Shown: positions 4,038-63,195 of the stretch, one piece after another | How positions within the stretch are numbered: position 1 is the first letter of the stretch | Layout: each line of letters starts with the position of its first letter | Assembly: GCF_003704095.1 (NCBI RefSeq) | Contig: NW_020846522.1 | Coordinates: forward strand, 1 to 64,000 | DNA from: Pocillopora damicornis | Taxonomy: Eukaryota | Direction: 5' to 3' | Length of the DNA stretch: 64,000 bases | Translations under genes and position numbers: made by a program | Notes under the pieces: generated by a model | What the model was told of the DNA's origin: nothing | What the model saw: only the letters and a program-made list of their open reading frames with translations | Databases searched by the model: none

Positions 4038-4652
4038 CTAACCGAAAAACTGCATCCAGTTATACTGTTTATAACTAGATGCACTGCTTGATGTCTCGCT
4101 GGTGCTGGACATGTTTTTCTGCATTTTAGCCTCACCTTGCATTATTTTCATGTACAACCCTTTGCTTGCCTCTGGGAGAGAGTTTTGAGCGCAGTGTACG
4201 TGCATGCCTGGAGGAAAAAAGTCTGGAAATGCCATCTGATTGTTACCTTTGTCGCGCGAGGTAACAGATAAATTGCGCTTGAGATTTCGTTTAAAATAAG
4301 TGGAAGTATTCTCTGTATTTTCTCGATGTTTCTGCTGCTGTCTCTGCGTATTACTTAATCCCCAATATTCTTCTTCAGGAACATTTATATTAACTTGGAA
4401 GCTTTTGTCCTCACTGTGGTGAGGTAGGATTCCTAATATTCCAGACGAGATATTTTGTTTTGGTCTAGCATCTGAAACAGTTTCTTCACAATCTTCGTCG
4501 ATCTCATAAATTGGTGGCAAATGTTTCGGAGAATTCCTTTTTCGTGTAAGAGAAGGTAATTTTGCGCTTCGTAAGTTTCTTTTGGCGTTCCTGCTGGACT
4601 CCTGACGATAAATGGTCATATTAATGAATTTCCTTCCCTTTCTGTGGAACAT
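4038..4652 (-). CDS. Motif-family member A (204 aa, uncharacterised, probably disordered)
   Basis: ATG-initiated ORF containing KHLPPIYEIDEDCEE (LxxIxE at 4503-4520), QMAFPDFFPP and terminal NWMQFFG*. TATAAA on the minus strand at 4896-4901. Confidence 0.85.
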   Translation of the reverse strand: MFHRKGRKFINMTIYRQESSRNAKRNLRSAKLPSLTRKRNSPKHLPPIYEIDEDCEETVSDARPKQNISSGILGILPHHSEDKSFQVNINVPEEEYWGLSNTQRQQQKHRENTENTSTYFKRNLKRNLSVTSRDKGNNQMAFPDFFPPGMHVHCAQNSLPEASKGLYMKIMQGEAKMQKNMSSTSETSSSASSYKQYNWMQFFG

Positions 4653-7600
4653 AACGCTTGTAAAAAGTCATCGTTGTACTTGATAATTATCTTCGTGTTT
4701 CAATCGATTCACGTGAAATCGTCAGATGTTCCTCGTGAAGGTGTTTTGATTACAGCTTGAAATCATCGAGCAACACTCCACTCTGAAATAAGCAAACTCA
4801 TCAAGCAGGAAAAAAAGAAGTCCGTTTCGGTGATTCCACGATTTTCATGGCAAGCGTAAATCAAGTTTACCCCAATTAGCTGAAATATGTGTTTCTTTAT
4901 AGCAACTAGAACAGATTTACGCTAAGTTACCTGCCCACGTTTGATCCAGCGAGTTTAAAAATAACCCATATCCGCCAACTTGTTGTTCTAAGCGAGGTGC
5001 GAATGTCTTTGTGATTGGTTCCGCCAAAACTTGTTTTCTAGCTTTCCGAAGATAACTAAATGCATGTCACGTCTCTCAAATCGCTTTTTTTTCCCTAAAG
5101 CAAGGGCTGTTTGGTTTCCGAAGACGCCGAAAATTAATTCAGCTATCGACAAAAAAGCTTTTCACAACTACGCTGTTTTCTTTATTGACCCAAAAATCTA
5201 ATTTTGGCTTCTATTCAAATGGGATACTAGGAGGGGAAATATTGCTGTCATTTCATTTGTTTTAACGACGATAAATTTTTGAGAAGATAGCAAAACAGGT
5301 CTCATGCCTATTATAATCTCGACATTTGCGGGCTTATTTGAAAAGCAAAATGACAAGGGGTTTTTGAACGCTCCAATGCGAGCTCAGGTGCAGGCAGGTG
5401 GATAAGATAACCGCTGCGGGAAACCGAAATGCCTCAGGCTACAGAATAATAGTCAACTGTCAGAGCTCTGTAGATATACCCTCACAAGGCACCAAAGCAC
5501 GCACAGAAACGACATGCCTAATCCATTTAAATAAGATCATCCAATTTCCAAAAACGTTGAACTCTATCTTCTTAAAGTACATCTATTAATGTAGGTCACC
5601 GATACCATGCATGGGGCGTCTTATTTCTTTTTACCTTTGTTTTCTTATTTTAATTTTCAGTTCAGATCCATCACGTTTTCAAGATGGTGAAAATTAAATT
5701 TGATTGCATAACATATGAAACTGAAGACAACATTCGTTTTGAGTCGAACATTTGTTTTTAAAACTTCTGTTTGTCTACTACAGGTGCCAGTAGACATCGA
5801 GTTCTCCCGCTTTGCAGGCAATAAACTATACCATGTTCAAAAAAAAGTAAATTGAATTCAACGTTTCGTGATCAATTGATGACATTTTATTGTTGATATA
5901 TCGTATTTATGTACATTAGAATTTGCAGTTCCTCTGATTGGTTACAAAACCCATTGTTTATCACAGCAATGAAACATGGACGTATTAAATTTTAAAGGTG
6001 CATTAAATCTGCAGTACCTGTTTTATAAAGTAGGCTCCATATGTCATCTGAGATGATTCTCGTCGTCTGTTTTGTTCGATGACATTAATTCAGTAATTCT
6101 TTGAGTAGTATCATACTCCTGGAACGTTAACTGCTATGCATTAGACTCACACTCTTTACCTTCAACGCTGATTTACATAAAAAGGAAAATGATGATAAGC
6201 ACAATGCTTTGCTTCGTCTGATGGAACAAATCAGTCTGCTTAATTTTTCTTAGAAATAAAGAAAAATACAAAGGGGTTTATAAGTATTTATCACTGAAAA
6301 AATGGTGAAATTGACGATTAAATAATAAAGCAAGTAATAAAACAACAGTCTCTCGAACTACACTACAGCTTCAATCATAAAGGTTTTCATTGAAAGTCAA
6401 CCTTTCATTCTGTTCTTTCTATATTTTTCCGCGAATGATATGAGATTAAGAGAAATGGGCTATTATAATTTTTTACAACTTGAAGTGTGTTCTTGAGGAG
6501 TTGTTCACCAAACACAATACTAGTATTTTTATTCTTAATTTGGGTATGAGGAAATTTTTACATCAGGAAAGAAAGTGTTTCATGATTTATCTCTAACCGT
6601 AATCAAATCTTGCTCGATCCCATACGCTTCCCATTTTGCCTTCAGTCACCGTTTTTTCCCATAATCGAACATTCATTATATGAACGTTCGTCTTTGGCGG
6701 CTGTAGCAAGGCCTTTGACATTCACCAAGAGTGGACTATACATAACGAAATCATAGAAAAACAGGGAAAAACATTCGGTTATACACTTCGACTGCAAAAT
6801 GAACCAAAAAACCAAAAACCACTTTAAACTGTTCATTACCCTTGAAATACCTTGTAGCCACTGAATGAGAAAGAGCGACCTGGAGGTAAAAAGGGATTTT
6901 ACTGCATCTATTTTACCACACAGATCTGGAGATTTTAATATCAGTTTTCATTCACCTTGGTATAAGTTAGTATCAAGAGCAAAGGCTGTTCTTAAGGTGG
7001 TTATTTTTACCGAAATTTGTCTGCAGAAAATTGCTTTAGGGTGTGACATTTCAAAAATGACAAATTGGATAATTAGTGGTGTTATACTTTTATTCAATAA
7101 CACACAATACAATTTTGAATAAGTAAAGAGAATTATGTATTTTTCCAAGAAAATTTGGAAATCATCATTTTGGTAAACGTGAATCGCTAACTCCTGTACG
7201 TCATGATGACGTCAGAGGGAGCTCAATCAACAGAGAATGTTTCCTCTCTGATGAGGGCTCAGGATGTTAACCATCACGGAGGTGTTAACAAAGTCAAATT
7301 TAAAAAGAACTTGCAGATGTATTTGCTAATTTCAGCACTCTTAGAAGGCTGCTACGTGATCTCATTTAGATACCCAAAAACAAATTTTTAGAAAACCAAA
7401 AGCTTATGAATCCAATGCAATAATTCTTGCATTTTAAATTAAGTTTCACTTTTTTCAACAAATTAAATTAAGGCGTATACTTGATAGCAGTCAAGAATAC
7501 TTGATGATTCTAAATTGTTCAAAAAGAAATAAAGAAGAAGAGCTTTCTTACACAATTTATGAAATTAAAGACATGGATTTTAGGTTCACGAAAAACTTCT

Positions 7601-10352: not shown

Positions 10353-10850
10353 ATGGAAAAGCCAAGCCGTTTATTGCATAGAAGCAAACGCTGTCTACAG
10401 CCTCTGGCTACGATATCCGAAGACATCGGAGAGACCCGAAAAAGCAGAAGACGAGAGAATGAAATTTGCCAAGATTGCGCAGACACAAGGGTGAAGGAGT
10501 ACAATGAACTTTTGTACGAGAGCACTCACTGTCTTCACATCAAAACTTTACCAGAAGATACACAATTACAAACTGAACTTCGCACTGAACTGAACTTGAG
10601 AGAGTCAAGGCTAGTTGTTTCCAAGAATGGACATTCGAAGGACATAAATTTTGCTAAAAATCTTTTTCCGGAGTTCTTTCCCAGAGACCTAGAACAAGGA
10701 TATAATTCTCACAGTGGCTTATGGGCAGCAAAACTGACAATGGAGGAAGTATTTTCAGGACGGATTCGCAGTGCTCGTGTTTCAGAGAAACAAGGACTTA
10801 ATCAGGAAGCAAGCTTTGAATATTGGAAACAATATCAATTATCATTCTAA
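10353..10850 (+). CDS. Motif-family member B (165 aa from first ATG)
   Basis: The ORF track start at 10269 is TTG; the first ATG is 10353 (aaagcgATGG). Contains LQPLATISEDIGE (10404-10421), FAKNLFPEFFP, TMEEVFSGRI and terminal FEYWKQYQLSF*. TATAAAT at 10222-10228, AATAAA near 11151. Confidence 0.85.
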   Translation: MEKPSRLLHRSKRCLQPLATISEDIGETRKSRRRENEICQDCADTRVKEYNELLYESTHCLHIKTLPEDTQLQTELRTELNLRESRLVVSKNGHSKDINFAKNLFPEFFPRDLEQGYNSHSGLWAAKLTMEEVFSGRIRSARVSEKQGLNQEASFEYWKQYQLSF

Positions 10851-12311
10851 CAATCTAAACTTAATCGATCATCTTTGAGAAATACGTGTTGACTACGTTT
10901 GATAGTTATTAGCAATCGGTGAAAAAAAATTCGAATGGATCAGTAAATTGGATTTATGCACACGTACCCCTCATAAACGTTGTAATTTATCACCTGTTTC
11001 TATTCAAGTGAATAGAATGGCAGACTAGATATGAGATTGTCTAGCCAAATGTGAGATGTATTAACTACCCCAAAATATGGAAAAATTAATTTGTTAGACT
11101 TTATACGTAAAAGCTAGTGTTTTTATTTTCAAAACATTGCGTATTAAACGAATAAAAAACCAATGATGTTCCTCCGTATTTCTTCAGTCCTCCCCAGTCA
11201 ATTTTCATATTCAGGAAAGGTCTGTCACGAGGGTAGTTAATAGTGGTGCATTCTATTGGCTGAGCGACGTCGAAGAAACCTCATTAACAACGAATTGCCG
11301 GAAGCTTTCTTGATAAGATGTCCGACTCTTTACCCAGTAGCTTATTCTAATCACAAAATCACAAGTTTAGAGTCTGCACAAAATTGAAAATTTATTTATC
11401 GTGCGCTTAATAACGAGTTTCTTACTTAGATTAAGTTCTTCACTATCTTGCGCGAGAAATTGACGATTTGATAATGCACGATGACAAATATTGCGGCATA
11501 TTCAAAGAGCGAATTAAATATCTGATGTAGGCCAAATGAACTCACGTCTAATTCGTGAGAGCTAAAAAAACACTGCGGCCTCATCACACACTGTAAAATC
11601 GGATAAACGATGAAAAAGAAGTTAATTCCTTCGTGCGATATTTTCCACAATGACATTTCTTCTTGAGCTGATTTCAGTCACAAGTCTTCGAACAACACAC
11701 GTGTTATTCGTTTTAGAATTCGACAATAGTTCATTTAGTATTTCGCCTTTTAAAATATCACGTTTCATTTGAAAAGTTATTGCATATATCTACACACAAA
11801 TGTTCAATGTTTCACACACGAGCGCCACTGAATTTTATTAGATCTACGTTTTTATCATTGTTTACTTCTTTTCACTCCTGATTTAATCAATAAGAGGCTC
11901 CTATGTTTGTCTTATATGAACGAAAGATGGATTTGGGTTTGATGAAAGGGAACTAAAAATATTAAATATATTCACCTGCTGAAAAAGATATGACAATTAC
12001 AAGTTGGATTCATTTTCACAAGAAAGAAAAATTGTGTTCTCCTCACTCCGCATATTCAACTTTTGGTTTTTAAATTCAAAGTTAAATAAATTGAAATCTT
12101 TTTCAAATAATTCTTTTGTCAAGGAACAAAGCAGAATATTATAATTACTTTTCAACGCACGTAAAGATGTGTCTGCACGGGTCATCAGCTAAACAAACAA
12201 TTAACGCGCCGGTATTGTATTATACTGCAGTCAACTCCTTTTATGGTAAAATGAAAAATTTAGTACCGGGCTAAGCCAGCTAGAGTAAAAAAAAAACGCA
12301 TTTATTTATAA

Positions 12312-12485
12312 AACAAACACGCCTGCTTTTGAAGTTGCTGTCTGAACAGAAGAAAAATGAATGACCTTCCTTTTGCTAGAAAGGGCTAAGCCCGCTTGAG
12401 TGAAAGTTATGTAACAAACACGAATGCTTTTGAAGTTGCAGTCTAAATGGAAGGAAAATAAATGACCTTCCTTTTACTGGAAAGG
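12312..12485 (+). repeat. Local ~100-bp direct duplication upstream of member C
   Basis: aacaaacacg..tgcttttgaagttgc.gtct.aa...aatgaccttcctttt.ct.gaaagg occurs at 12312-12385 and 12413-12485. The homologous region upstream of D (about 17686-17756) has one copy. Confidence 0.75.
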
Positions 12486-12778
12486 TCGTTAAACATGACA
12501 ACAATGGCCATGTCGGAAAGGACAGATGTTGTTTCCCAGCAGGCCATTCAACGAACTTGCATACGTAGAAGCAGTTAAAAAGACTAGAACCTCCTAGAAT
12601 AGTCGTTTTCGAAGGTTTCCATCGAATTTCAAGAACACGAATCCGAAGCATAAAATTTAATTCCTTAATAATAACACAAAAATGATATTCTTCGACATCC
12701 AAAGTGATGCAAACGATTTGGCAAAACTCTGGGAGCATTACTCTTCACGTTCAGATGAGTGTGATGGATGTAAGAAGT

Positions 12779-12801
12779 GCAACGTGACCACGCTGACGTA
12801 A
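12779..12801 (+). promoter_or_regulatory. Conserved upstream block of C with CRE/ATF-like TGACGTAA
   Basis: gcaacgtgaccacgctgacgtaa is identical at 17825-17847 upstream of D while the flanks have diverged. Confidence 0.55.
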
Positions 12802-13039
12802 CAAGATGACGACGAACGAAGCCATGCTTGTTGATATAACTGTGCACCAAACATCAAGCTTCAGTTCAAGGCGACTTAGGAATTTCATTTTGGTGCCGGA
12901 TACATTCTTGATCTATAGCTGTAGTATTTGCAGGGTGCATTGTCGTAAAGCGAGCATAAAAACAGGAATTGCACCAAAGCAAACACAGATCGGGTTTGAA
13001 GGCCTTGAATAAATTCCCACCGCTTAGCTAAGAGGAGCG

Positions 13040-13567
13040 ATGAACCAAGCACCCGAGAATGAGTGCAGCCAAGGAGTATGCAAGGTGGCTAGAAGACCTA
13101 CTTCTCTACCGAGTCCATTCATACATACAAGGATGGAGATCAATCCAGCAGATTTGACGGCTGATCTTCAAGGAGTACAAGCTGCAGGGAATACGTTTGG
13201 CAACGAATCACGTCTAAAGTATGGCAAGCTCCTGATCCCAGGAGAGTGCAACAAAGAGGATCACAATGGAGCAGCAGAGAAAAGTTACCAGCGTAAAAGC
13301 TTGCTGAAGAGAAGAAGACATAGTGAGCCTCTTCACTCTGCTCATGCAGAAGTACAGCTCAATTCCACAGGAAGTTCTGCTGATTCTTCTGGATCAAGCC
13401 TATTGTTGGAAAACCACAAGACGAGAAACTTCCGCAAAAAAGATATTACAGCAGCTAAGGCATTTTTTCCCGACTTTTTCCCTCAACAACCCTTACGAGA
13501 CAGGTACGATTGCTTACATTCGCATCCAACCTTGGAACAGATTTTCTCAGGTCAGATTAAGTCTTAA
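13040..13567 (+). CDS. Motif-family member C (175 aa), paralogue of D
   Basis: ATG in ggagcgATG context. Contains DITAAKAFFPDFFPQQP and PTLEQIFSGQ, plus RRHSEP and RPTSLP sites. It lacks LxxIxE and the terminal W motif. Confidence 0.8.
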   Translation: MNQAPENECSQGVCKVARRPTSLPSPFIHTRMEINPADLTADLQGVQAAGNTFGNESRLKYGKLLIPGECNKEDHNGAAEKSYQRKSLLKRRRHSEPLHSAHAEVQLNSTGSSADSSGSSLLLENHKTRNFRKKDITAAKAFFPDFFPQQPLRDRYDCLHSHPTLEQIFSGQIKS

Positions 13568-17824: not shown

Positions 17825-17847
17825 GCAACGTGACCACGCTGACGTAA
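17825..17847 (+). promoter_or_regulatory. Conserved upstream block of D with CRE/ATF-like TGACGTAA
   Basis: 23-bp identity with 12779-12801. TATATAA follows at 17960-17966. Confidence 0.55.
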
Positions 17848-18019
17848 AAACGTGAAGCCATGATTGTACATACAACTGTACGCCGAAAACTCAAGTTCAG
17901 GTTCGAGGCGACTTAGCTATTCCAACTTGCTGAGCACGTCCCTCTGTTGCACTAGCGAGTATATAACAGGAATTGCTCAAAAGCAAAGGTACATTGTCTT
18001 CGAAGACCTAAAAGGAGCG

Positions 18020-18589
18020 ATGTATCAGCTACCTAGAGATAAATACAGTCTTGGAGTATGCAAGGAGCTTGAAAGATCCAATTTTCTCTCAAGCACATTC
18101 AAACGTACGATGACGGAGACCAGCGCAGCAGAAATGGCCCCTGATATAGAAAAACAGGCAAGGAACATGTTTGGTAACCGCGAATCACGTTTGAAGCGAA
18201 GTAGGCTTATGATCGCAGAAGAGTGCGTCAATAACGATGACGATGGTGCAGCTTACACGCCTGAAGATTTGGTGACGAATAAAAGATTAAGTGAGCCTCT
18301 ACACTTTGCCCATGCAAAAGGACAGCTCACTTCCGCGAGAAGTTCTTATGTTTGCTTCGGAACTACTTGCCGACCGATGAAAAACATTATGCCGATAAAT
18401 TTGCATGTGAAAGACATCACAGCAGCTAAGGCATGTTTTCCCGACTTTTTCCCTCAACAACCTTCACGAACCAGTTACGATTCCCTACAATCGTATCCAA
18501 CCCTGGAAGACATTTTCTCAGGTCAGTTTCAAGTCTCAACAACCCTGAGTGATAGGACACAAACATTTCCAAGAAACAAATATATGTAA
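18020..18589 (+). CDS. Motif-family member D (189 aa from first ATG), paralogue of C
   Basis: The ORF track start at 17864 is TTG; the ATG at 18020 has the same ggagcgATG context as C. Contains DITAAKACFPDFFPQQP, PTLEDIFSGQ and SEPLH. DNA similarity to C extends several hundred bp upstream. Confidence 0.8.
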   Translation: MYQLPRDKYSLGVCKELERSNFLSSTFKRTMTETSAAEMAPDIEKQARNMFGNRESRLKRSRLMIAEECVNNDDDGAAYTPEDLVTNKRLSEPLHFAHAKGQLTSARSSYVCFGTTCRPMKNIMPINLHVKDITAAKACFPDFFPQQPSRTSYDSLQSYPTLEDIFSGQFQVSTTLSDRTQTFPRNKYM

Positions 18590-20757: not shown

Positions 20758-20842
20758 TGACGTGTGACCACGTAAAATGACGTGAATGACGTGAAATGAC
20801 GCGAAACTCGTAAAAGTTCAAGAAACCAACGTATTTCCTAGA
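20758..20842 (+). promoter_or_regulatory. Cluster of four TGACG half-sites plus TATA upstream of member E
   Basis: TGACG at 20758, 20778, 20787 and 20797; GTGACCACG at 20764-20772 (shared with C and D); TATATA at 20837-20842. Confidence 0.5.
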
Positions 20843-21045: not shown

Positions 21046-21426
21046 ATGACTCACTTTCAAGTGTGTTCTGGTTGTAGACGCAAGGCAAAAAACACACAGA
21101 AAACAGCAAATGATTTTGAAAAGGAGACCAACTCAGATCTCAAGAATACCCAACTTCTGCGTTCCACAGACATAAGTATTTGTCTCCAGATATCAGACGA
21201 AAAGAAAACCACCCTTAGCCACCCATCCAGATGGAGAGAACTTGATATGGCTTTGAAACTCTTACCAGAATTTCTTTCCCGACGCAGGAACCAAGAGACA
21301 AGTTTCCCATCTATAATCTTAACTAGTAATGAAGAAAAGGGTCCTATCGAGAAGCATCTTGAGAACTCTAAAGAAATACTCGAGTGGGTAAAACTTGAGT
21401 ATGGAATTCTTTCAAAGAGCTGTTGA
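21046..21426 (+). CDS. Motif-family member E (126 aa, divergent, possibly 5'-decayed)
   Basis: ELDMALKLLPEFLS is a central-motif variant and EILEWVKLEYG a terminal-motif variant. AATAAA near 21572. Confidence 0.65.
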   Translation: MTHFQVCSGCRRKAKNTQKTANDFEKETNSDLKNTQLLRSTDISICLQISDEKKTTLSHPSRWRELDMALKLLPEFLSRRRNQETSFPSIILTSNEEKGPIEKHLENSKEILEWVKLEYGILSKSC

Positions 21427-23406: not shown

Positions 23407-23880
23407 CTATCCAAAAAATTGAAGCCACGAAGCAACAATGTTTTCCTTGTTGTGGGAAAAATGTCCACCTCTCTTTGTATTTGACCGCGAAGAATTTCTC
23501 GCAGTCTTAGTGTCAAGGTCTATCTCGTTCCTATTGCGATCAGAAGGCCTAAAATCCGGAAATATATTCTGATCACTACAGGCTTTATAACTGTCCTTTA
23601 TCGCTGTTCCCTTTCTGAGTAATGCTTGTCTGTGAGTATTCTCAAGGCACGGTAGCACAGGCAGAATGAAAATATCATTGGGTTTGCTACACTCTCTAGA
23701 AACAGCTAAATCACCACAGGAGTGAACCCTTCGCTGGAATCTTCTGTGTGTTCCTTCGACCGGCCGGCCAAAAGGACATTCGTCGTCATCAAAATCCTCG
23801 TTATCTTCTCTCTTTTCCAAGATTGTACTTAAATGCCGAGTCATGTTTAATCGTGGTAAGAATGGTAGAGTTTGTTTCAT
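23407..23880 (-). CDS. Motif-family member F (157 aa from first ATG)
   Basis: The ORF track start at 24111 is TTG; the first ATG is 23880, downstream of TATAAATA (24003-24010, minus strand). Contains RHLSTILEKREDNEDFDDDE (23815-23832), QNIFPDFRP and terminal VASWLQFFG*. Confidence 0.85.
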   Translation of the reverse strand: MKQTLPFLPRLNMTRHLSTILEKREDNEDFDDDECPFGRPVEGTHRRFQRRVHSCGDLAVSRECSKPNDIFILPVLPCLENTHRQALLRKGTAIKDSYKACSDQNIFPDFRPSDRNRNEIDLDTKTARNSSRSNTKRGGHFSHNKENIVASWLQFFG

Positions 23881-30366: not shown

Positions 30367-30687
30367 TCATGCCTTGGTAAGGCCAAAGTACATCATCCAA
30401 GATTCCTTGATTTTTTCCACTTCAGACCGGCCTTTTTCTTCGTTCTCCCAAGAATAATATTTTCTTATGTCTGTGCCTTTAGAAGGATCGAACTTTTCAT
30501 CATTCATAGTTTTCTTCGTCATCTCGTCAGGCGGGAAAAAGTCTGGAAGTATTTTGGAACCTTTGCGACGAAATACCTCCCGACGTTTCTGTGTGCGCTC
30601 AGAGCGACTTAATCTACGTTTACTGCGGCTGCTGTAAGACGAAACCAGAGGAACATAGGAGATCTTTTGTGTCACGGACGATTCCAT
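30367..30687 (-). CDS. Motif-family member G (106 aa), paralogue of H
   Basis: KGSKILPDFFPP, YSWENEEKGRSE and IKESWMMYFG. An in-frame upstream relic reads HHLSAILS. Confidence 0.8.
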   Translation of the reverse strand: MESSVTQKISYVPLVSSYSSRSKRRLSRSERTQKRREVFRRKGSKILPDFFPPDEMTKKTMNDEKFDPSKGTDIRKYYSWENEEKGRSEVEKIKESWMMYFGLTKA

Positions 30688-32983
30688 GTCTTCTTTTCTC
30701 GATGTATGGCGTTGTGTTCTCTCTGGACTTCTACGCCACTCAAAAGATGTGTGTGAAAGAATTGCACTGAGGTGATGTGCAAAACTCTAGAGCCTTTGTG
30801 GCACGAACGAAGGCGATGCTCTTGAGACTCTTGAGCACAAACTTGTTATATCTGTTCTCTTATCTGATTGCTGTGAGTAGATTTACTGTGATTTGATCCC
30901 ATTGGTTGAAACTGAGAAAACTCCGATGTAAATAAGCACAACTTTACATATTTCGTGCCGTTTTGACGATCAGCCAGACGGCTAAAGAAAATGAAATTGA
31001 CAGAGGGTGCCACCTTGACAGCTTTACCCTTTTAAAAAAAGGGCCAAATGCAGCGCTTAAAAACTGCTGCACATATTTTTTTAACAACTCTCTTCGAATT
31101 CGAATTGGCGAGAAAACAAACCGTAGTTTTTCAACTAGAACAGCTATTTCTTAAACATTTTTTAAGAATTTTTCTTCGCAGCCTTTAAAAATGTTTTTTG
31201 ACTTTGTTGTGATAATCTTCTGTCTGATTTTGGTGTTTTATAGTCATTCTGTTCTCCATCATTATCACTCACGGCATGTATAAAGTCTGAAGAATCATGT
31301 TAAGNNNNNNNNNNNNNNNNNNNNNNNNNNNNNNNNNNNNNNNNNNNNNNNNNNNNNNNNNNNNNNNNNNNNNNNNNNNNNNNNNNNNNNNNNNNNNNNN
31401 NNNNNNNNNNNNNNNNNNNNNNNNNNNNNNNNNNNNNNNNNNNNNNNNNNNNNNNNNNNNNNNNNNNNNNNNNNNNNNNNNNNNNNNNNNNNNNNNNNNN
31501 NNNNNNNNNNNNNNNNNNNNNNNNNNNNNNNNNNNNNNNNNNNNNNNNNNNNNNNNNNNNNNNNNNNNNNNNNNNNNNNNNNNNNNNNNNNNNNNNNNNN
31601 NNNNNNNNNNNNNNNNNNNNNNNNNNNNNNNNNNNNNNNNNNNNNNNNNNNNNNNNNNNNNNNNNNNNNNNNNNNNNNNNNNNNNNNNNNNNNNNNNNNN
31701 NNNNNNNNNNNNNNNNNNNNNNNNNNNNNNNNNNNNNNNNNNNNNNNNNNNNNNNNNNNNNTTTAGTCGCTATCAGTTGTGTTGTGAAGTTATCCATTAA
31801 GGATGTCGAACAGATCGCCTGCTATACCATTGATATTCGTCAAGCGATGAGGTTGAGTGATTTACACGTTTCTGTTTAAGTGCCGTGATGGATCGCTGCA
31901 ATTCGTGCGTTTTAGCACACTGTCATTAGTGCGTTTCAAAAGCACAACTGCCAGTTAGTAATAAAAGCGGATCTATGGGAGAAGGACATCAATTTTTTGA
32001 CATAACAATAACGACTGAGTTTTGATTCTTCAATGCTTTTACGATAACAACTTCATATCGTGAAACGATAGACGAGAAATTCATTAACCAGCATCTAAAA
32101 CTTTAATCAATTTATCAAGTTATTTTTTTCCCTCACTGAAAATTTATGCGAGACTCTAACATCAAAGTTACCGAGTAATCCAGTCAACTTGGCCTATGTA
32201 GCCGGAAACAATGATCTTACAGACTTATTGGGATTCTAAAGGAAATGCATGCTGTAATTGATGTGCGTATTCAAACCCAGCTTTTGCGTATTTGAGGTTA
32301 GCGCTATCAAATATTTTCAGGTCGGGGAAAGGTTAGAAATCTCTGATACATTAAATCTCTTTGGCTTTAGAGCCACGCATCGCTTGAACCAGCGAACGAC
32401 AGTTGTGATTTTGCAGTTGCCTCTCAGTCGTTTCTGCAATACTGTGAACATATTTGCATTTTTTTGAGTGGGAGATATTTTCCAATTTCGACAATCTATA
32501 TAAGCGATTGGGAAGAAACTGCGAAAGTCAGAAGTAAAATTTGGCGATCACGTTTATTATATATTAAAATGAACTTAATCATGGTTTGACCATGATACGA
32601 TAGGCCATTAGGTTTGGAAGACAATGTTATCAATCAAAGTTGTAGTCGATATTTTCAGATTCTATAATCGAAGCACGTATCTCTGATAAATTATGATAGG
32701 AAATAAGTACTGCTTTGCTTTTGAACATAGTTTATGTGGTAAAATCAAGGTATTGGTTCAGTCAGTCATCATTATGAATGGAAAAGCCTTCATGAAAAAA
32801 TCCAAAGTATGGTAAATCAAAATCCTAAGTAACTTCATAAATCATTTGCATATATTCGTATTGATGCTGAATTATGGCGTTCAGTGACAACATACAACAA
32901 CAGAGAAATCAGATTCATATCCGTTTTCTAGCTTACAAGAGTCAAACATAGAAATAGAATTGTATTAATGCATGTTTTTAACA

Positions 32984-33331
32984 TCATAAACGGGCTGAAA
33001 TTCTCACATCGAGGCCATCGAAACCATAATACATCAGCCACGATTCAGCAATAGTTTGGGCCTCAGAGAAACCGTTCTCTTCATTTTCCCACGAGTACTG
33101 CTTTATCACTGTAACTCTTTTGACAGCAGAAAGACCTGTTTGTTGTCTTAAACTTTTCTTTTGCGTGGTGTTTGGTGGGAAAAAATCTGGAAGTATTTTG
33201 GAACCCTTTTGCCAACTCATCTCGGCTAGACTTCTGCGTGGTGTCTTTTTATCAAATTGTAGTTTTTCTTTGGCGATGGTGGGTGATACCAAATGGGTTT
33301 GGAGAACGTTCTGCATTGCAGATATATCCAT
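32984..33331 (-). CDS. Motif-family member H (115 aa from first ATG), paralogue of G
   Basis: KGSKILPDFFPP, YSWENEENGFSE and IAESWLMYYG. The track start at 33367 is GTG; the first ATG is 33331. TATAAA on the minus strand at 33599-33604. Confidence 0.8.
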   Translation of the reverse strand: MDISAMQNVLQTHLVSPTIAKEKLQFDKKTPRRSLAEMSWQKGSKILPDFFPPNTTQKKSLRQQTGLSAVKRVTVIKQYSWENEENGFSEAQTIAESWLMYYGFDGLDVRISARL

Positions 33332-36300
33332 CACATCAAATTTTAACTTTTGACCTGAACTTTTCACTTTTCAGACCTATCAGGTTTTCGGCGATAAATC
33401 GATATTCGAAATAGTTTCTCCAAGCACGGGGACAACTGATGCTTTGCGAGTTACACTGTGATGGCTGTCGAGACTAGCTCTGCGGGCCAGTATCCTTAAA
33501 AACAAGCCAAGAGTGATAGAAGAATCGATGAGCGTACTCCAAAGAAGTGTGAACCAAACGGAGTTCTTTCCGTGTAAGTGTAGCCAAGGCGCTGCTTGTT
33601 TATAAGACAGCGCAGCACTGATAGCAGTAATTTAATTATGCTGTCAGGACCTCAAAGCCAGAACACGTCAAAGTGATATTTACATAATCATGTAATATGC
33701 TTGGCAGATATCAAACTTTTTTATTCGTAACAGTAGAACTTGTAGGAAAGCAAAAACAATTATAAACACTTTCTGTCTGAAATACGTCGACAAACTTTTC
33801 GCAAAAAATTATATGGTGATGGCTGAAGTTACGTGGTTTTAAGAGTAATTTTATCAAGATTTCATATTTGTTTCAATTTTTTAGCTATTGAAAGAACATA
33901 ATTTTTTTACGGTTGAAAACGTGACCAGAATTTTAATATCATAGTTTCTGATTAAACATCTGGACGCAAAAGGCAATGTCGACAAGCCGACAAAAAGCCG
34001 GTCCATGGATTGCTTTAATTGTCTTACCTAAGTAACAATAAAACTGGTGAAGAGCCTTTACCTTTTATGGTGATAAAATTCTCGGCGGCGGAGGCAGTGA
34101 TTCTAATAGAATCTCAAGTGATTAAATGTGGAACAAATACTGATTACTCCACAAATAGAGCTTATCTCTGCGGTTTTTTTTATTTTTCTGAAAAAATAAA
34201 GGTCACAAAAGTTGAATAAATGTTCTAGAATCTGTTTGTGAAAAGTGTATTCTTTTCTAGACCATATTCCTTTCCTTTGTCGGCATTTCCTAACGTGAGG
34301 CCACCAGGAGTGTTAGCAGAGTCACTTTTATTACCTTATTAAGCTTTGTGCGAACACTCCACCGCCGAAGTTTTTCATAAACATTGCAAGAGCATGAACT
34401 TAAAAAAGTGTTCGATCGTTTGAAAAAAAGTGAAGACCATTTTGAAATTGTTCAAATCCTTGAGTTTCTCTGGTAGCCACATTATAATGATAGCAAGGGC
34501 ACTTGTATCATTGATAACGATCGCATTTAACTTAAGTTGAAATAAATGAAAATCTGACCTTGGGGAAAATAATTAGAGTCGTCTCTTATTACCATAATTC
34601 TAAAATTCAAATTTGAATTTCAATGCCCAATGTTTCATGCCTTGATAGAGTATTACAAGCTCTGCTCCTCAGACGACATTGTAAAATAAGTGTAAGAGCA
34701 CAAAATACTGAGTAGACCTTGAATCTTGAGAATCCCAGGTATTTTGCGCCGCTCATGTTCCAATAATAAAACTGATTGGGAAAGAAAATAGCTTAGGTAA
34801 AGTTTCGAAGCCGGTATTTCAAAATGTAAGGGTCTATGATCTTTTATTTTTCTTCATTACAGTCAGAGATGAAGAGAATCACCCAAAATGGGAAAAAATA
34901 ATTGAGCTCCAAACCCTCATCGAGTGAATTGGTCCAGATAAGTCACAAGAGACTAAGACTGAAATTACACCTACATGTAAAGCAAGCTACCTATTCATTT
35001 TCGTGCTCAAAGATTCTTAATATATCTGGCAATCACCACTCGTGCTATGATAGGTAACTTTAACGGACCTTAGTCTATTTCACGACCCGCGAAAACAGTA
35101 CGGCGCTCGAACTCGGTTAGAAAGACGTATTTGTTCTTTGAATATTCATGTCTCGTAACTTGAGCCACCAATAAACACAGAATTCGGGAAGATTATTTTC
35201 CTATCTGTCATTTGATTCTTCAGTAGGAATGAGGTATTTTTCTATGTCCCGAGTTCTGATTGGCTACCAGAGCTGGCTGGATATACTCGCTGTACTCTTG
35301 CAAAAGGTGAAATGCAGTGCAATATTTTTCTCTTTGATATATCCTCCATTGACTTAGCCTTATTTTAGTCAAAAGAGCTGGATAATAGCTCTGTTATTTC
35401 CCGTTTTCATAAAATAGTGACGTACAGATCTAGTACAATAAAATTTGTATAACGAGGAGATCCACTTTTCACCAGTCCCTGACTAGAATTTTGAATAGCT
35501 ACGGCACTTTTGCACGTCAAAGTCTCCATTTTTTGCGCTAACTTTTCAAATGGGGAGAAATCTGAAGTATCGCCCATCAAGATTTCTCACTGCTTTTCAA
35601 TCTATACTCGAAAATTTTGGTGATATAACAGCATGCTAAGTGTCGGCAAATGATTTATTTTTTAAACTTTCAGAAATTACGTAGGTTGAAACAGAGCAAA
35701 AAAGTCATAAGATTGCTCTCCTCACGGCTGGAGATCTCGAACTTACTTAAAAACAAACTTGAGAAGACATGTATTTGTTCACGACCTCTCTTGATTCTGC
35801 CACGTTAAAAAACAAAAACAAATACAAGGTACTTACGTATTTGACACCTACTGAGAGAATTTTAATTTCCGATGCCGCAAATATTGTAGTTTTGAAGTAA
35901 TCTCTACTTATGAACGTGGCAAACTGCACAATCGAATATCCCATCGTACAAAACATGCTCAAGGTTGAGAATTAAACTCTCAGAATTTTCCTCTCATTTT
36001 CTTATTAAAGGGAACAGCATTTGGCCTTCCCTGAAACTCCCTTGGGTTTTGCTTTTGCCGAGCTTGCTCTGATATTTTTTTTCGATTATCTTAAATTTTT
36101 TCTGTTGTTTCCTCTCCATGTAGATCTGGTTAATATTTCCTTTATCATGGAGGGAAATCACTTATTTACTCATGTTAATTTACTCAATTTTTTTTCATTT
36201 CTCAAAAAAACAGCTTAATTTATTTTTTAAACCAGAACCCCTTTTAGCACAAATTGCTATCAGGTTTTTTTTTTATCGAGCTTCTTGGTGATCTCTGCTT

Positions 36301-37358: not shown

Positions 37359-37850
37359 TTATCCAAACTGAAACTCAATCCAAGCAGCTATCTCGCTTAG
37401 CTTTAGTGCTTGAGTGTCTGTGCTTATCAGTTTTACTTGTGCCTTCTTGGTTGAAGGCAAAATTCGACTGTGTATAAAAGACGTGTTCGTGCTCTCTACT
37501 GGGCGAAAGTTGACATAAGGAGTTCTTAAAAAATTATTCCATCCGTCTTGGATTTGCTGGTATGGAAGTGATGCCTGAGGTTTCATCAGCGACGGAATGA
37601 TACTTCGCCCATGTCTTTCCGCCATCCTGAGCTTAGAAACTTTCATCGTAGTAAAAGAGGGTGATGAAACATTCTCTTCAGATCGGACTCCGTCGACCCC
37701 TTGCTGCTTTTCTTCAACTTCAGTAAGACTTTTATTTGATTCCTTCTATTCAGTGGCCTCGAGAACAATTGGAAGTCGACGCGAATGAGTGAAATTCACT
37801 GAACGAATCGGTGAATAACCTCTGTGTTTAGATCCCGTAAATCGGCACAT
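37359..37850 (-). pseudogene. Motif-family member I, interrupted by one in-frame TAG
   Basis: The ATG at 37850 reads MCRFTGSKHRGYSPIRSVNFTHSRRLPIVLEATE* (TAG at 37746-37748). The same frame then runs open into ORF 37359..37646 (PYVNFRP, EIAAWIEFQFG*). Confidence 0.7.
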
Positions 37851-41632: not shown

Positions 41633-42172
41633 ATGAGGGAAATGCTGAAAAAATCAAACTATATTCGCTCCAGAAGGCTAAATACAATAATCGAAATAGC
41701 GGAGACACAGGACGAAAATGAGAATTCGTTAGCGGTCTCGATTCCGGTGAAAGAACAAATTTCAAGTGGTGCCTGTACTGCAGCAAGAACACTGAGTAAA
41801 ATTCCTCTAGCAGAAAGATCTGTTGCACGTAGCCCCCGCGTAGAACAAGTCGTTTCCTCCCACGCAACGCCAGAAACACAGTTATCCACGACATCACATT
41901 GGCGGGAAAAACCGAAAGTATCAACAAAACCCACGGGTATGGACAAAAACTCAAATACTGACGCTTTGACGCTGAAATCTCCGGCGGTCAGAAAAGATAT
42001 TTCCGAAGTTGAGTTTTTTTTTCCTGAATTCTTTAAAAACAGCGAGGCGCAATGCGTTCCCGAAAAGATTAAGAATGCTCACAAGGAAGCTAATCAATAC
42101 ATTAAGAGCCAGAGCGACGATCCGTTCGTCCAGTCCTGGCTGGATTTGTTTGGGCCGCAAGTTTATGGTTAG
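41633..42172 (+). CDS. Motif-family member J (179 aa from first ATG)
   Basis: RRLNTIIEIAETQDENE (41678-41695), DISEVEFFFPEFF and DDPFVQSWLDLFG. TATATATA at 41527-41534. Confidence 0.87.
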   Translation: MREMLKKSNYIRSRRLNTIIEIAETQDENENSLAVSIPVKEQISSGACTAARTLSKIPLAERSVARSPRVEQVVSSHATPETQLSTTSHWREKPKVSTKPTGMDKNSNTDALTLKSPAVRKDISEVEFFFPEFFKNSEAQCVPEKIKNAHKEANQYIKSQSDDPFVQSWLDLFGPQVYG

Positions 42173-45898: not shown

Positions 45899-46324
45899 TC
45901 ATTTTATTATTTGATGCCCAAAAAGCTTCATCCAAGCGTTGAAAACCGGATCCGCTTGATACTTAAGCGGGAAGAAGCATTCTTGCTGATGATAATCCTT
46001 TATTTCTTCGTGAGGGAAGAAGTCGGGAAATAGACCTTTCGCGATAGAGAACGTCACAATTCTAACATCAGTTGGATCATGACAACTTTTTCGTCTCTCT
46101 CCGTAATCAGCTGATTTGGATTTTCCAGCCAAAGCTAATTTCCTTGGACGGCAAAGCTTCGTTAATTCTGTGGTTCCGTTAATTTTAAGCCTTGGGTGCC
46201 GCAATTGTGGTTTTTCGTATAACAGAGCCAAACACTTTTCTTCGCAGACAATACACAATGTGTCGTCCTCGCAGGGCAATTTTGGGTGAAGGTAGCAAAA
46301 TCTCCGGCGGGTAAGCGCTTGCAT
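45899..46324 (-). CDS. Motif-family member K (141 aa from first ATG)
   Basis: DTLCIVCEE (46241-46258), RRKS, SIAKGLFPDFFP and ADPVFNAWMKLFG. TATAATATA on the minus strand at 46387-46395. Confidence 0.83.
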   Translation of the reverse strand: MQALTRRRFCYLHPKLPCEDDTLCIVCEEKCLALLYEKPQLRHPRLKINGTTELTKLCRPRKLALAGKSKSADYGERRKSCHDPTDVRIVTFSIAKGLFPDFFPHEEIKDYHQQECFFPLKYQADPVFNAWMKLFGHQIIK

Positions 46325-52217: not shown

Positions 52218-52271
52218 ATCTTGATTACAATCCCTGGTTTTATGTGGCACGTGATATCTGAATGTCGTTTA

Positions 52272-54770: not shown

Positions 54771-54890
54771 TTTATGAATTGAATCTTACTAAATCTATTA
54801 GGGATCGTGAATAAATTAGAGATATGCTCGTGAAGAGTCTGAGATTTCATACAAAGCTATGTAAACACGGATATCCTCACTCTACAGATT

Positions 54891-57863: not shown

Positions 57864-58136
57864 ATGGAAAGGGCGCCGGTAACTTGTCACGTGCAAGTGG
57901 GCTTTACAGAACAGCTATCACAAAAAACCGATCAGCTTAAAAGTCACCAAAAAGCGAATAGTCAGCAGAGTCAAGTCGAAAGGCTTTTTCCAGAATTTTT
58001 CTCCGGTTGCAACGAACCACGTTTCAAAGAAATGTGCAAAGACAAGGCTCACACACATTTGAAGGCGGAACAAGGGTTCGACCCGCTGATTCAATCGTGG
58101 TTAAGCTTATATGGAGGAAGCGCATGCGTCCATTAG
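57864..58136 (+). CDS. Motif-family member L (90 aa, no N-terminal motif)
   Basis: SQVERLFPEFFSG and FDPLIQSWLSLYGG. The frame is open upstream to 57798, with possible splice acceptors near 57791 and 57801. Confidence 0.78.
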   Translation: MERAPVTCHVQVGFTEQLSQKTDQLKSHQKANSQQSQVERLFPEFFSGCNEPRFKEMCKDKAHTHLKAEQGFDPLIQSWLSLYGGSACVH

Positions 58137-62673: not shown

Positions 62674-63195
62674 ATGGAAAGGATAACCAAAAGAGCTCCT
62701 CTCGTCCGACTCGACACGATCGAGGAAACATCAGAACCAGAAGAGAGCAGCAATTATTGTTTGGATTCAGCGCTGCCACGAAAACAATTTGGAAGATCCC
62801 TTGATTTTTCAACTCTAAGGAGAAAAAGAATTGGCTCTCATCACACCAGACGAGTACGCAATAAAACTGACATGGAACATGATCATTCGATTTCTCAGGA
62901 ATGTACTGGTGAACCTACAAAAACAATAAAGACTGGAGAAGGGACAAGATCTCACAAAGGAAAAAACCGCAATGTTAAAAAGAGACAAACAGACAACATT
63001 AATTCACCGGACATGACACAAGTTAAAATGCTCTTCCCAGACTTTTTCCCGAAGAGTTCCATTACTCAAATGAGATGGCAAAGTGAATTGGCTGGCACTA
63101 ATTATCAAAACTACAGAAACCTGCGAAAGAGAAAGGAAGAGGATCCTCTGATTCATTCTTGGCTAAACTTATTTGGCGCTCGTGCTATATTTTAG
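62674..63195 (+). CDS. Motif-family member M (173 aa)
   Basis: PLVRLDTIEETSEPEE (62710-62727), DMTQVKMLFPDFFP and EEDPLIHSWLNLFG. Confidence 0.88.
   Translation: MERITKRAPLVRLDTIEETSEPEESSNYCLDSALPRKQFGRSLDFSTLRRKRIGSHHTRRVRNKTDMEHDHSISQECTGEPTKTIKTGEGTRSHKGKNRNVKKRQTDNINSPDMTQVKMLFPDFFPKSSITQMRWQSELAGTNYQNYRNLRKRKEEDPLIHSWLNLFGARAIF

What the first reader, a model, noticed from the sequence alone, without database searches (positions are those of the whole stretch)
4038..63195. A ~60-kb cluster of 13 or more intronless, hyper-diverged paralogues linked only by three short motifs
Seen in sequence: most of the longest genuine ORFs share motifs in the same order. Central motif: A AFPDFFP, B LFPEFFP, C FFPDFFP, D CFPDFFP, E LLPEFLS, F IFPDFRP, G and H ILPDFFP, J FFPEFFK, K LFPDFFP, L LFPEFFS, M LFPDFFP. 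Terminal motif: A WMQFFG, E WVKLEYG, F WLQFFG, G WMMYFG, H WLMYYG, I WIEFQFG, J WLDLFG, K WMKLFG, L WLSLYG, M WLNLFG. N-terminal Lxx[IV]xE is present in A, B, F, I, J, K and M. The linkers are S/K/R/E/T-rich and unalignable, with no obvious signal peptide or TM segment. Inference: an old tandemly expanded family of disordered intracellular adaptors that pairwise BLAST would treat as unrelated orphans. It is architecturally analogous, not homologous, to the Drosophila Bearded-family clusters of small intronless motif proteins. I do not recognise it as a described family.
Basis: partly seen in the sequence, partly recalled or inferred. Interest (0 to 1): 0.92.

Follow-up and report, generated by a model that had tools for sequence, protein, structure and literature searches.

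The report
Conserved coral cluster of motif-only proteins
A 60-kb stretch of a reef-coral genome holds 13 small, apparently intronless genes for disordered proteins that share only a few short conserved motifs; the family is real, ancient (corals and sea anemones), under selection and undescribed, but its function is only inferred.

Summary
The core [FLI]P[DE]F[FLR] occurs 12 times in the six-frame translation (0.67 expected), always inside one of the longest ORFs. A thirteenth member (I) is recognisable through its intact orthologue and carries one in-frame stop. The three assembly gaps lie between genes.

The genes are real. They have orthologues in Stylophora, Desmophyllum and a third coral genome, with the same gene order and orientation, and relatives in the anemone Exaiptasia. 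dN/dS is 0.20-0.58, and motif residues change about five times less often than linker residues. A polyadenylated transcript contig of the H orthologue in a related coral is colinear with the window.

Pfam, PDB sequences, fold search and the literature give nothing. The only names found are "hypothetical protein". AlphaFold2 predicts disorder with three more confident islands at the motifs. There is no signal peptide or membrane segment.

My best reading is a hexacorallian family of motif-only adaptor proteins. The central motif and the C-terminal W-helix would bind a common, unknown partner. An N-terminal LxTIxE with a basic patch, present in about half the paralogues, fits the PP2A-B56 docking motif. 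That mechanism is inference.

"Linked only by three motifs" is overstated: subfamilies are BLAST-detectable and further motifs exist.

The parts
4038..4652 (-). Gene A, 204 aa. Has the LxxIxE-type motif (LPPIYE followed by an acidic run), a central FPDFFP, and ends WMQFFG-stop.
10353..10850 (+). Gene B, 165 aa. Has LATISE, a central FPEFFP, a TMEEVFSG motif and a W-containing C-terminal variant.
   Evidence: Its orthologue is the N-terminal half of the Stylophora model PFX25171.1.
13040..13567 (+). Gene C, 175 aa. Has an RRRHSEPL site, a central FPDFFPQQP, and ends TLEQIFSGQIKS. It lacks an intact LxxIxE.
   Evidence: It is 59% identical to P0019, the Stylophora cluster.
18020..18589 (+). Gene D, 189 aa from the first ATG that aligns with C. 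It is a paralogue of C (48% identity) and the only pair that still shares DNA similarity.
21046..21426 (+). Gene E, 126 aa, the most divergent member. Has a central LPEFL and a terminal WVKLEYG.
   Evidence: An E-like gene sits at the same place in the cluster in a third genome.
23407..23880 (-). Gene F, 157 aa. Has LSTILE followed by an acidic run, an RRVHS site, a central FPDFRP, and ends WLQFFG-stop.
30367..30687 (-). Gene G, 106 aa. Has an RRLS site, KGSKILPDFFPP, YSWENEE, and a terminal WMMYFG. It has no LxxIxE.
   Evidence: (dN/dS 0.20)
32984..33331 (-). Gene H, 115 aa, a paralogue of G (40% identity).
   Evidence: (dN/dS 0.31)
32056..33457 (-). The stretch of the window that is colinear with a 1.46-kb polyadenylated transcript contig of the H orthologue (L026) in a related coral. 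It comprises a 5'UTR of about 126 nt, the CDS, and a 3'UTR of about 1 kb, with no intron.
37359..37850 (-). Gene I, a member of a distinct subfamily with LPIVLE, a degenerate central motif, and a WIEFQFG-stop ending. It is interrupted by one in-frame stop at 37746-37748, so it is a pseudogene, a shortened product starting at 37646, or an allele or sequencing error.
41633..42172 (+). Gene J, 179 aa. Has RRLNTIIE, a central FPEFF, and DPFVQSWLDLFG.
   Evidence: J clade support 100/100
45899..46324 (-). Gene K, 141 aa from the first ATG, cysteine-rich. Has LCIVCE, a central FPDFFP, and DPVFNAWMKLFG.
57864..58136 (+). Gene L, 90 aa, a short form without LxxIxE. Has QVERLFPEFF and DPLIQSWLSLYG.
   Evidence: (dN/dS 0.25). 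L-like and M-like genes are also neighbours in Desmophyllum.
62674..63195 (+). Gene M, 173 aa. Has RLDTIEE, a central FPDFFP, and DPLIHSWLNLFG. A TATA-like box and upstream non-coding blocks are conserved in two related species.
   Evidence: dN/dS 0.58 and 0.45

Best explanation
Shown. The window carries a tandem cluster of 12 intact genes and one interrupted gene. They belong to a protein family restricted, as far as the searches reach, to Hexacorallia (stony corals and sea anemones). Each gene is a single ORF of 90-204 codons. The products are basic-to-neutral, hydrophilic and predicted to be disordered. They are conserved only in short islands. The subfamilies (A/F, B/C/D, E, G/H, I, J, L, M/K) arose before the pocilloporid-Desmophyllum split. 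They have kept their order and orientation since.

Inferred mechanism. The proteins work as strings of short linear motifs, that is, as adaptors or competitors rather than enzymes or structural domains. The part shared by the whole family is the central hydrophobic-P-[DE]-F-F motif, preceded by a short helix, plus the C-terminal amphipathic helix [SA]-W-hydrophobic-x-hydrophobic-[FY]-G. I take this pair as the module that binds one common, still unknown partner.

About half of the paralogues (A, B, F, J, K, M and the I type) add an N-terminal L-x-T-I-x-E. It is followed by acidic or phosphorylatable residues and preceded by 3-4 basic residues. This is the pattern of the PP2A-B56 docking motif with its basic patch. 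Those members would bring PP2A-B56 to the common partner, or to their own RRxS-type phosphosites. The members without it (C, D, E, G, H, L) would occupy the partner without the phosphatase.
For: The family is real and under selection:
- The central motif occurs 12 times against 0.67 expected.
- The profile of the C-terminal part finds only 45 representatives among 1.84 billion proteins. All are 59-269 aa and all match at their C-terminus. The 50-sequence profile finds 74 more.
- dN/dS is 0.20-0.58 in five orthologue pairs.
- Motif windows show 5.4% substitutions against 24.9% in linkers, Fisher P 1.6e-6.
- In 18 non-redundant M/J-type sequences, conservation peaks at the three motifs.

Age and synteny:
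- Desmophyllum contig MU827326.1 carries I-like, I-like, G/H-like, G/H-like, and separately L-like, M-like, L-like.
- A third genome carries G/H-like, F-like, E-like and B/D-like genes in the window's order and orientation.
- The Stylophora model PFX25171.1 joins a B-like and a C-like gene.
- Exaiptasia AC249_AIPGENE1570 has the central and terminal motifs.
- The tree gives starred clades in which window genes pair with genes of other species.

Expression and intron-free structure:
- L026 ends in AATAAA, ten A and an Illumina adapter, where the window has no A-run. It aligns to the window as one colinear block.
- Many 1-1.7 kb contigs of the orthologues recur across sequencing runs.

Disorder:
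- AlphaFold2 gave mean pLDDT 60.6 and 62.5 and pTM 0.24 and 0.20. Confidence of 70-86 is reached only at the motifs.
- GRAVY is -0.36 to -1.21 and no 19-residue window exceeds 0.91.

B56 reading:
- The published definition is [LMFI]xx[ILV]xEx, with L preferred at P1, I at P4, E invariant at P6, and acidic or phosphorylated residues at P2 and P7-9 (PMC10970375).
- A basic patch within about 15 residues N-terminal has also been described (PMC7108865).
- Among the 35 non-redundant members that match, P1 is L in 29, P4 is I in 30, P9 is E in 21 and P2 is D or S in 18. They have on average 3.8 K/R in the 15 residues before the motif.
- F-type LSTI[LV]E resembles the validated Emi2 LSTLRE and HBc LSTLPE.
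Against: - No binding was tested. The LxxIxE pattern is short and occurs by chance roughly once per ten proteins of this size.
- About a third of non-redundant members (35 of 98) have it. The best-conserved subfamily (G/H) lacks it, so it cannot be the family's core function.
- In the anemone proteins P6 is mostly D, which the published motif does not allow.
- T at P3 is conserved beyond what B56 docking is known to need, so the island may serve another partner.
- The partner of the central and C-terminal motifs is unknown.
- Transcription is shown only for orthologues in a related species, not for the window's own genes.
- A 5' non-coding exon cannot be excluded.
Confidence: 0.4

Rival explanations
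1. The C-terminal 60-70 residues form a small helical domain. It would run from the helix before the central motif through a middle helix to the C-terminal W-helix, and fold on its own or by oligomerisation. The 'motifs' would then be its hydrophobic core rather than docking peptides.
For: AlphaFold2 places three helices at residues 112-120, 132-148 and 158-167 of M, with pLDDT of 70-81 at two of them. The central and terminal motifs always occur together, in the same order and 30-55 residues apart.
Against: pTM is 0.20-0.24. With a 43-sequence alignment, G shows only the C-terminal helix and an N-terminal basic helix and nothing at the central motif. The stretch between the two motifs is not alignable between subfamilies and varies in length. 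There is no fold match in the PDB.
Confidence: 0.2
2. They are nuclear, rapidly induced regulators, such as transcription cofactors or cell-cycle or stress regulators. The hydrophobic motifs would contact a nuclear hub protein. The basic clusters would be nuclear localisation signals and the RRxS sites kinase switches.
For: Basic clusters (RRKR, KKRQ, KRR) occur in most members. RRxS sites are conserved. Small intronless genes with TATA-like boxes fit this picture. ACGTG is twice as frequent as expected in the 500 bp upstream of the ATGs (30 against 14, P 1e-4), and TGACGT occurs 7 times against 3.1 expected.
Against: There is no expression data and no localisation data. The promoter enrichment is modest and uneven: it is absent at G, J and M.
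Confidence: 0.15
3. They are endocytic accessory proteins that dock on the AP-2 alpha appendage through FxDxF (FPDFF), WxxF (WMQF near the C-terminus) and DPF-like peptides.
For: A, C, D, K and M match F-x-D-x-F. A and F end W-x-x-F-F-G. J has DPF. Several such peptides in one disordered chain are typical of AP-2 accessory proteins (my own knowledge, not tested here).
Against: Only 5 of 12 members match F-x-D-x-F. The family-invariant residues are the P and the first F after [DE], not the first and fifth positions of FxDxF. F-type has R at position 5, G and H have L at position 1, and half have E in place of D.
Confidence: 0.08
4. They are not functional genes. They would be chance ORFs, decaying copies of a repeat or transposon, or alternative terminal exons of a larger gene.
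For: No annotation pipeline except two has called them. One model (Stylophora) splices two of them together. I is broken.
Against: The ORFs are intact in several species, with dN/dS below 1 and motif-specific constraint. Order is conserved in three genomes. There is no DNA-level repetition except between C and D, and no transposon domain. The genes lie on both strands, each with its own start and stop. There is a colinear polyadenylated transcript.
Confidence: 0.03

Closest known systems
PP2A-B56 interactors that carry an LxxIxE docking motif with an N-terminal basic patch (KIF4A, RepoMan/CDCA2, AIM1, NHS, BubR1, Emi2)
   Same: The N-terminal island of A, B, F, J, K, M and the I type fits [LMFI]xx[ILV]xEx. 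It has the preferred L at P1 and I at P4, E at P6, frequent acidic or S residues at P2 and P9, and 3-4 basic residues in the 15 residues before it. It lies in a predicted disordered region.
   Different: There is no homology outside the motif. These are tiny proteins in which the motif sits 13-45 residues from the N-terminus. Half of the paralogues lack it. Binding is untested.
Drosophila Bearded / E(spl)-complex m4 family
   Same: A tandem cluster of small, intronless genes whose products share only a few short motifs (my own knowledge, an architectural analogy).
   Different: No sequence relation was found. None of the 50 family members matched any Pfam family at a significant level. The phylum and the motifs differ, and no link to Notch signalling is implied.
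Mammalian BEX/TCEAL cluster (taxon-restricted cluster of small disordered proteins with single-exon coding regions)
   Same: A lineage-restricted tandem family of short, disordered hub-binding proteins (my own knowledge).
   Different: It is unrelated in sequence. BEX/TCEAL is young (eutherian), whereas this family is shared by anemones and stony corals.
Database entries: hypothetical proteins OS493_027396, OS493_027401 and OS493_027402 (Desmophyllum pertusum), AWC38_SpisGene10189 (Stylophora pistillata) and AC249_AIPGENE1570 (Exaiptasia diaphana)
   Same: They are true homologues of the window's G/H, L, M, B+C and A/F-like genes.
   Different: They are unnamed and uncharacterised. The Stylophora model is a fusion of two neighbouring genes.

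Membership tests
PP2A-B56 LxxIxE docking motif class | The sequence matches [LMFI]-x-x-[ILV]-x-E-x, with E invariant at P6 and at least one of L at P1 or I at P4 (PMC10970375) | tested here: met
   It is met in A, B, F, J, K and M, in the 5' piece of I, and in 35 of 98 non-redundant family members. It is absent in C, D, E, G, H and L. The motif is therefore a feature of some subfamilies, not of the whole family.
PP2A-B56 LxxIxE docking motif class | Acidic or phosphorylatable residues at P2 and P7-P9 | tested here: met
   P2 is D or S in 18 of 35. P9 is E in 21 of 35. P7 is T, S, E or D in 20 of 35.
PP2A-B56 LxxIxE docking motif class | A basic patch within about 15 residues N-terminal of the motif (a subset of interactors, PMC7108865) | tested here: met
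   The mean is 3.8 K/R in the 15 residues before P1, and 31 of 35 have at least 3.
PP2A-B56 LxxIxE docking motif class | The motif lies in a disordered, accessible region | tested here: met
   The AlphaFold2 model of M has no secondary structure in residues 1-111. There is a local pLDDT rise to 75 at residues 11-20.
PP2A-B56 LxxIxE docking motif class | Physical binding to the B56 pocket that is lost on mutation of P1, P4 or P6 | not testable with these tools
   This needs ITC or pull-down with B56, or at least complex prediction, neither of which is available here.
AP-2 alpha-appendage ligands (FxDxF, WxxF, DPF) | F at positions 1 and 5 and D at position 3 of the central peptide | tested here: not met
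   Only A, C, D, K and M fit. B, J and L have E. G and H have L at position 1. F has R and E has L at position 5. The invariant family residues are P and the following F.
PCNA-interacting PIP box | Q-x-x-[ILM]-x-x-[FY]-[FY] | tested here: not met
   Read by eye from the contexts. No member has Q three residues before the hydrophobic position. Only E, G and H have L at that position, E lacks the FF pair, and the others have F.
Any Pfam family or solved structure | A significant profile or fold match | tested here: not met
   Pfam on 10 window proteins and on all 50 members of A3 gave nothing above the noise. A PDB profile search gave a best E of 0.77. Foldseek gave a best E of 3.4.
Secreted cnidarian peptide or toxin families | An N-terminal signal peptide, or a cysteine framework | tested here: not met
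   The first 20 residues are not hydrophobic (mean hydropathy -1.10 to 0.53). The maximum 19-residue hydropathy is 0.91. There are 0-8 unordered cysteines.
Drosophila Bearded family | The family's own motif set and Neuralized binding | not tested
   This is only an architectural analogy. No sequence relation appeared in any search.

The most novel reading that the evidence does not exclude
This is a hexacorallian-specific set of PP2A-B56 targeting adaptors kept as an ordered gene cluster for several hundred million years. All paralogues would hold the same partner through the central motif and the C-terminal W-helix. Only some would carry the phosphatase-docking LxTIxE module. The ratio of 'armed' to 'unarmed' paralogues would then set the phosphorylation state of that partner. 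This would be a lineage-specific, motif-only regulatory layer on a universal phosphatase.
Probability: 0.2. Interest if true: 0.75.

Novelty: new variant of a known kind. Interest (0 to 1): 0.6.

Why it matters
Small intronless genes for disordered proteins are routinely missed or mis-joined by eukaryotic annotation. Here only a handful of 'hypothetical protein' entries exist, and one of them fuses two neighbouring genes. This family shows that such genes can be old (shared by anemones and stony corals), can be kept in a fixed order, and can be constrained almost only at short motifs.

If the N-terminal motif does dock PP2A-B56, the cluster would give a tractable, lineage-specific handle on phosphatase targeting in reef corals. 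It would also be a natural experiment in how motif-only proteins diversify after tandem duplication. If it does not, the family is still a clean test set for methods that detect homology among disordered proteins.

Tried and rejected
- Pfam scans of the window proteins, of all 50 aligned members and of ten non-family ORFs found nothing.
- Rfam and tRNA scans of the window found nothing.
- A PDB profile search and Foldseek on the model of M found nothing. The low-confidence model makes the fold search uninformative anyway.
- Literature searches for the motif strings and for the accession numbers of the named homologues found no relevant paper.
- I took the contigs carrying the anemone-type protein (L010-L019) for transcripts at first. 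The sequence shows a microsatellite and promoter-like DNA, so they are genomic and say nothing about expression.
- The gene calls next to M on the Tara scaffolds contain stop codons in the standard code and were discarded.
- The look-up of the Exaiptasia locus failed because the product is not on record. Whether anemones have a cluster therefore remains open.
- I looked for shared 8-mers in the promoters and found none in more than 3 of 13.
- I considered these readings of the central motif by eye and rejected them for lack of fit: FFAT, RVxF, FxxP, MAPK DEF, EVH1, G3BP FGDF-like, LIR and NES. They were not tested with tools.
I repeated the calculation from the files in /data.
- The family tree rests on 74 columns. 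Only 7 of 47 inner branches are well supported, so I use it only for the subfamily clades.


Full report
**What is in the window.** The window is AT-rich eukaryotic DNA (about 36% GC) with five runs of N. The pattern [FLI]P[DE]F[FLR] occurs 12 times in the six-frame translation. One hundred block shuffles gave a mean of 0.67 and a maximum of 4. The ten longest-ranked non-family ORFs I scanned (of 16 with at least 100 codons; the longest is 154 codons) have no significant Pfam match; one weak sub-threshold hit to SMIM43 (E 0.00086, 19.7 bits, cutoff 27).

A W-x(3-4)-[FY]-G motif lies at or near the stop codon in A, E, F, G, H, I, J, K, L and M. B, C and D carry a related T[LM]E..[IV]FSG motif instead. 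An L-x-x-[IV]-x-E motif lies near the N-terminus of A, B, F, J, K and M. Profiles built from the family separate the 12 ORFs (E <= 1e-10) from every other ORF of at least 25 codons (E > 1). This test is partly circular, because the window's sequences are in the profiles.

**The assembly gaps.** The gaps at 14546-14807, 31305-31761 and 39183-39316 lie between C and D, G and H, and I and J. No family ORF touches a gap, so no frame has to be carried across one. The 165-167-codon 'ORFs' at 31297-31800 are translated N. Gene order across them rests on the scaffold and on the matching order in other corals (see synteny below).

**The thirteenth member.** ORF I (37359-37646, minus strand) has only the terminal motif. 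The locus 37362-37850 aligns in a single frame over its whole length with an intact 167-residue ORF of Desmophyllum pertusum (45% identity, E 4.5e-32). That ORF has an N-terminal LPTIHE, a degenerate central motif and a WLEFFG-stop ending. The window copy has one in-frame stop at 37746-37748. The count is therefore 12 intact genes and one interrupted gene.

**Relatedness among the paralogues.** In a small database, BLASTP links C-D (48% identity), G-H (40%), B-C, B-D, J-L, J-M, K-M, L-M and G-M. A, E, F and I are joined to the rest only by the motifs and by their place in the cluster. At the DNA level only C and D still resemble each other: 79% over 161 nt, plus an upstream element. 'Hyper-diverged' is fair. 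'Linked only by three motifs' is too strong.

**Source organism.** Protein M is 99% identical to a protein on 50-60 kb scaffolds of Tara Pacific coral metagenomes. The cluster holding the closest relative of C (59% identity) includes a Stylophora pistillata entry. The window therefore comes from a pocilloporid stony coral, probably a Pocillopora. That last step is inference.

**The family elsewhere.** I searched a profile of the C-terminal part against 1.84 billion representative proteins. It gave 45 hits at E <= 1e-3. All are 59-269 residues long and all match at their C-terminal end. A 50-sequence profile searched against 5.8 billion proteins gave 74 hits, mostly of the G/H type.

The only names attached to any member are 'hypothetical protein':
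- OS493_027396, _027401 and _027402 in Desmophyllum pertusum;
- AWC38_SpisGene10189 in Stylophora;
- AC249_AIPGENE1570 in the anemone Exaiptasia diaphana.

The anemone proteins have LFPDFFPKND, CSWE followed by acidic residues, and IVNSWMQFFGH. The family therefore spans Actiniaria and Scleractinia. The Stylophora model is a fusion of a B-like and a C-like gene. These are neighbours on the same strand in the window.

**Synteny.** On Desmophyllum contig MU827326.1 the order is I-like, I-like, G/H-like, G/H-like. About 20 kb further on it is L-like, M-like, a broken M-like copy on the other strand, and L-like. On a 1.58-Mb contig of a third coral genome the order is G/H-like (+), F-like (+), E-like (-), B/D-like (-). 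This is the window's B...H order and orientation read backwards.

A maximum-likelihood tree of the C-terminal part has only 74 columns and mostly weak support. It gives well-supported clades for G/H, J, L and the M/J/L group. Window G and window H each pair with a different gene of a related species. The duplications therefore predate these species.

**Selection.** I compared window genes with their orthologues in related species. dN/dS is 0.58 (M), 0.25 (L), 0.31 (H) and 0.20 (G), and 0.45 for M against a more distant orthologue. Pooled over four pairs, motif windows have 6 changes in 111 residues and linkers have 93 in 374 (Fisher P 1.6e-6). In 18 non-redundant M/J-type sequences, column conservation reaches 90% or more only at R.LDTIMET.E, QVE.LFPEFF and EDPL.QSWL.LFG. 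The G/H type has 12 invariant columns in 43 sequences.

**Transcription and gene structure.** Contig L026 comes from a sequencing run of a related coral and carries the H orthologue. It ends with AATAAA, about 25 nt, ten A and an Illumina adapter. The window has no A-run at the homologous place. The contig aligns to window 33457-32056 as a single colinear block. Identity is 86.5% in the 126-nt 5'UTR, 88.8% in the CDS and 78.8% in the 3'UTR. This is a polyadenylated, unspliced mRNA of about 1.46 kb.

Orthologues of G, H and M recur as 1-1.7 kb contigs in dozens of runs. This fits transcripts but I did not verify it run by run. Upstream of M, a TATA-like box about 125 nt before the ATG and several non-coding blocks are conserved in two other species. 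Transcription of the window's own genes was not testable.

**Protein properties.** Of the residues, 50-67% are S, K, R, E, T, Q, N, D or P. GRAVY is -0.36 to -1.21. No 19-residue window exceeds a hydropathy of 0.91, and the N-termini are not hydrophobic. There is therefore no membrane segment or signal peptide.

AlphaFold2 with the 50-sequence alignment gives M a mean pLDDT of 60.6 and a pTM of 0.24. Confidence rises only at residues 11-20 (75), 111-130 (about 80) and 151-170 (70-77). It places helices at 112-120, 132-148 and 158-167. With a 43-sequence G/H alignment, G has a mean pLDDT of 62.5 and a pTM of 0.20. Its only helices are at 28-39 and 89-100, and the second of these is the terminal motif (pLDDT 86).

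**Mechanism (inference).** The architecture is that of a motif-only protein. The central motif and the C-terminal W-helix are present throughout the family, so I take them as the module that binds a common partner. That partner is unknown.

The N-terminal island fits the published PP2A-B56 docking motif. The motif is [LMFI]xx[ILV]xEx, with L and I preferred, E invariant, and acidic or phosphorylated residues at P2 and P7-9 (PMC10970375). A basic patch within about 15 residues upstream has also been described (PMC7108865). Among the 35 non-redundant members that match:
- P1 is L in 29;
- P4 is I in 30;
- P9 is E in 21;
- P2 is D or S in 18;
- the 15 preceding residues hold 3.8 K/R on average.

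F-type LSTI[LV]E resembles the validated Emi2 and HBc motifs quoted in those papers. Members with the island would recruit the phosphatase. Members without it (C, D, E, G, H, L) would compete for the partner. Conserved RRxS-type sites are candidate substrates or switches.

Several points count against this reading. Only about a third of members carry the island. The anemone proteins mostly have D at P6. T at P3 is conserved without a known reason. Nothing was tested physically.

**Rivals.**
- A small helical domain rather than docking peptides.
- Nuclear, rapidly induced regulators. This rests on basic clusters, RRxS sites, and a twofold excess of ACGTG and of TGACGT upstream of the ATGs.
- AP-2 appendage ligands. 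Only 5 of 12 members fit FxDxF, and the invariant residues are the wrong ones.
- Non-genes. This is contradicted by selection, synteny and the transcript.

**Comparison with known families, and verdict.** There is no Pfam, PDB or fold match. The motif strings do not appear in the literature. The Bearded and BEX/TCEAL clusters are analogies of architecture only.

The finding is a real, conserved, undescribed family. The kind of thing, a lineage-restricted tandem family of small disordered motif proteins, is known. This family, its age and its fixed gene order are new. No sequence here was taken for human.

Noticed in passing
window 10353-13567; P0181 (Stylophora pistillata PFX25171.1): The 296-residue Stylophora gene model is a B-like protein spliced onto a C-like protein. 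The predicted donor lies inside B's TMEEVFSG motif. It looks like an annotation chimera of two neighbouring intronless genes, although a read-through transcript is not excluded.
   Followed up: partly
window 37746-37748 (minus strand): There is a single in-frame stop in gene I, 35 codons after the ATG that aligns with the intact Desmophyllum orthologue. I did not check whether other individuals of the species share it.
   Followed up: partly
window about 20755-20800 (upstream of E); also upstream of C (about 12780-12810) and D (about 17825-17850): E has three closely spaced TGACGTG copies 257-288 nt before its ATG. C and D share ACGTGACCACGCTGACGTAA. Over all 13 genes ACGTG is twice as frequent as expected in the 500 nt upstream (30 against 14). 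This may be a shared bZIP or bHLH-type control element.
   Followed up: partly
window about 33332-33457 (5'UTR of H): The 5'UTR is 86.5% identical, without gaps, to that of the related species. This is nearly as conserved as the coding region. It contains GAAAAGTGAAAAGT, which resembles an IRF or ISRE-type repeat.
   Followed up: no
window about 32080-32085 (minus strand): Where the related species has the AATAAA used for polyadenylation of the H transcript, the window reads AATGAA.
   Followed up: no
window 51490-52217: There is a satellite of 6.8 copies of a 106-nt unit (90% matches) in the 11-kb gene-free interval between K and L.
   Followed up: no
window 48740-48810 and 49946-50016: A 71-nt inverted repeat (83% complementary) encloses 1135 nt. 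It may be a small non-autonomous DNA transposon.
   Followed up: no
window 12306-12384, 12407-12485 and 17681-17759: A 79-nt element is duplicated in tandem upstream of C and present once upstream of D. It is part of the C/D segmental duplication, whose spacing is about 4.97 kb.
   Followed up: no
window 15628-15777: There is a tandem repeat of 7.8 copies of a 19-nt unit between the first gap in the finding and gene D.
   Followed up: no
window 861-1115 (+): A short ORF has a terminal-motif-like SWMAIFG. It scores only E 1-2 with the family profiles. It is probably chance, but could be a relic of a further member at the edge of the window.
   Followed up: partly
L001-L008 (Tara Pacific scaffolds around M): The 'genes' called next to M on these metagenome scaffolds contain stop codons in the standard code. 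They are artefacts of prokaryote-style gene calling on coral DNA.
   Followed up: yes
L020:15306-15557 (Desmophyllum): This M-like copy on the opposite strand has lost the W of the terminal motif and its N-terminal half. It is probably a pseudogene, which shows that the cluster turns over.
   Followed up: no
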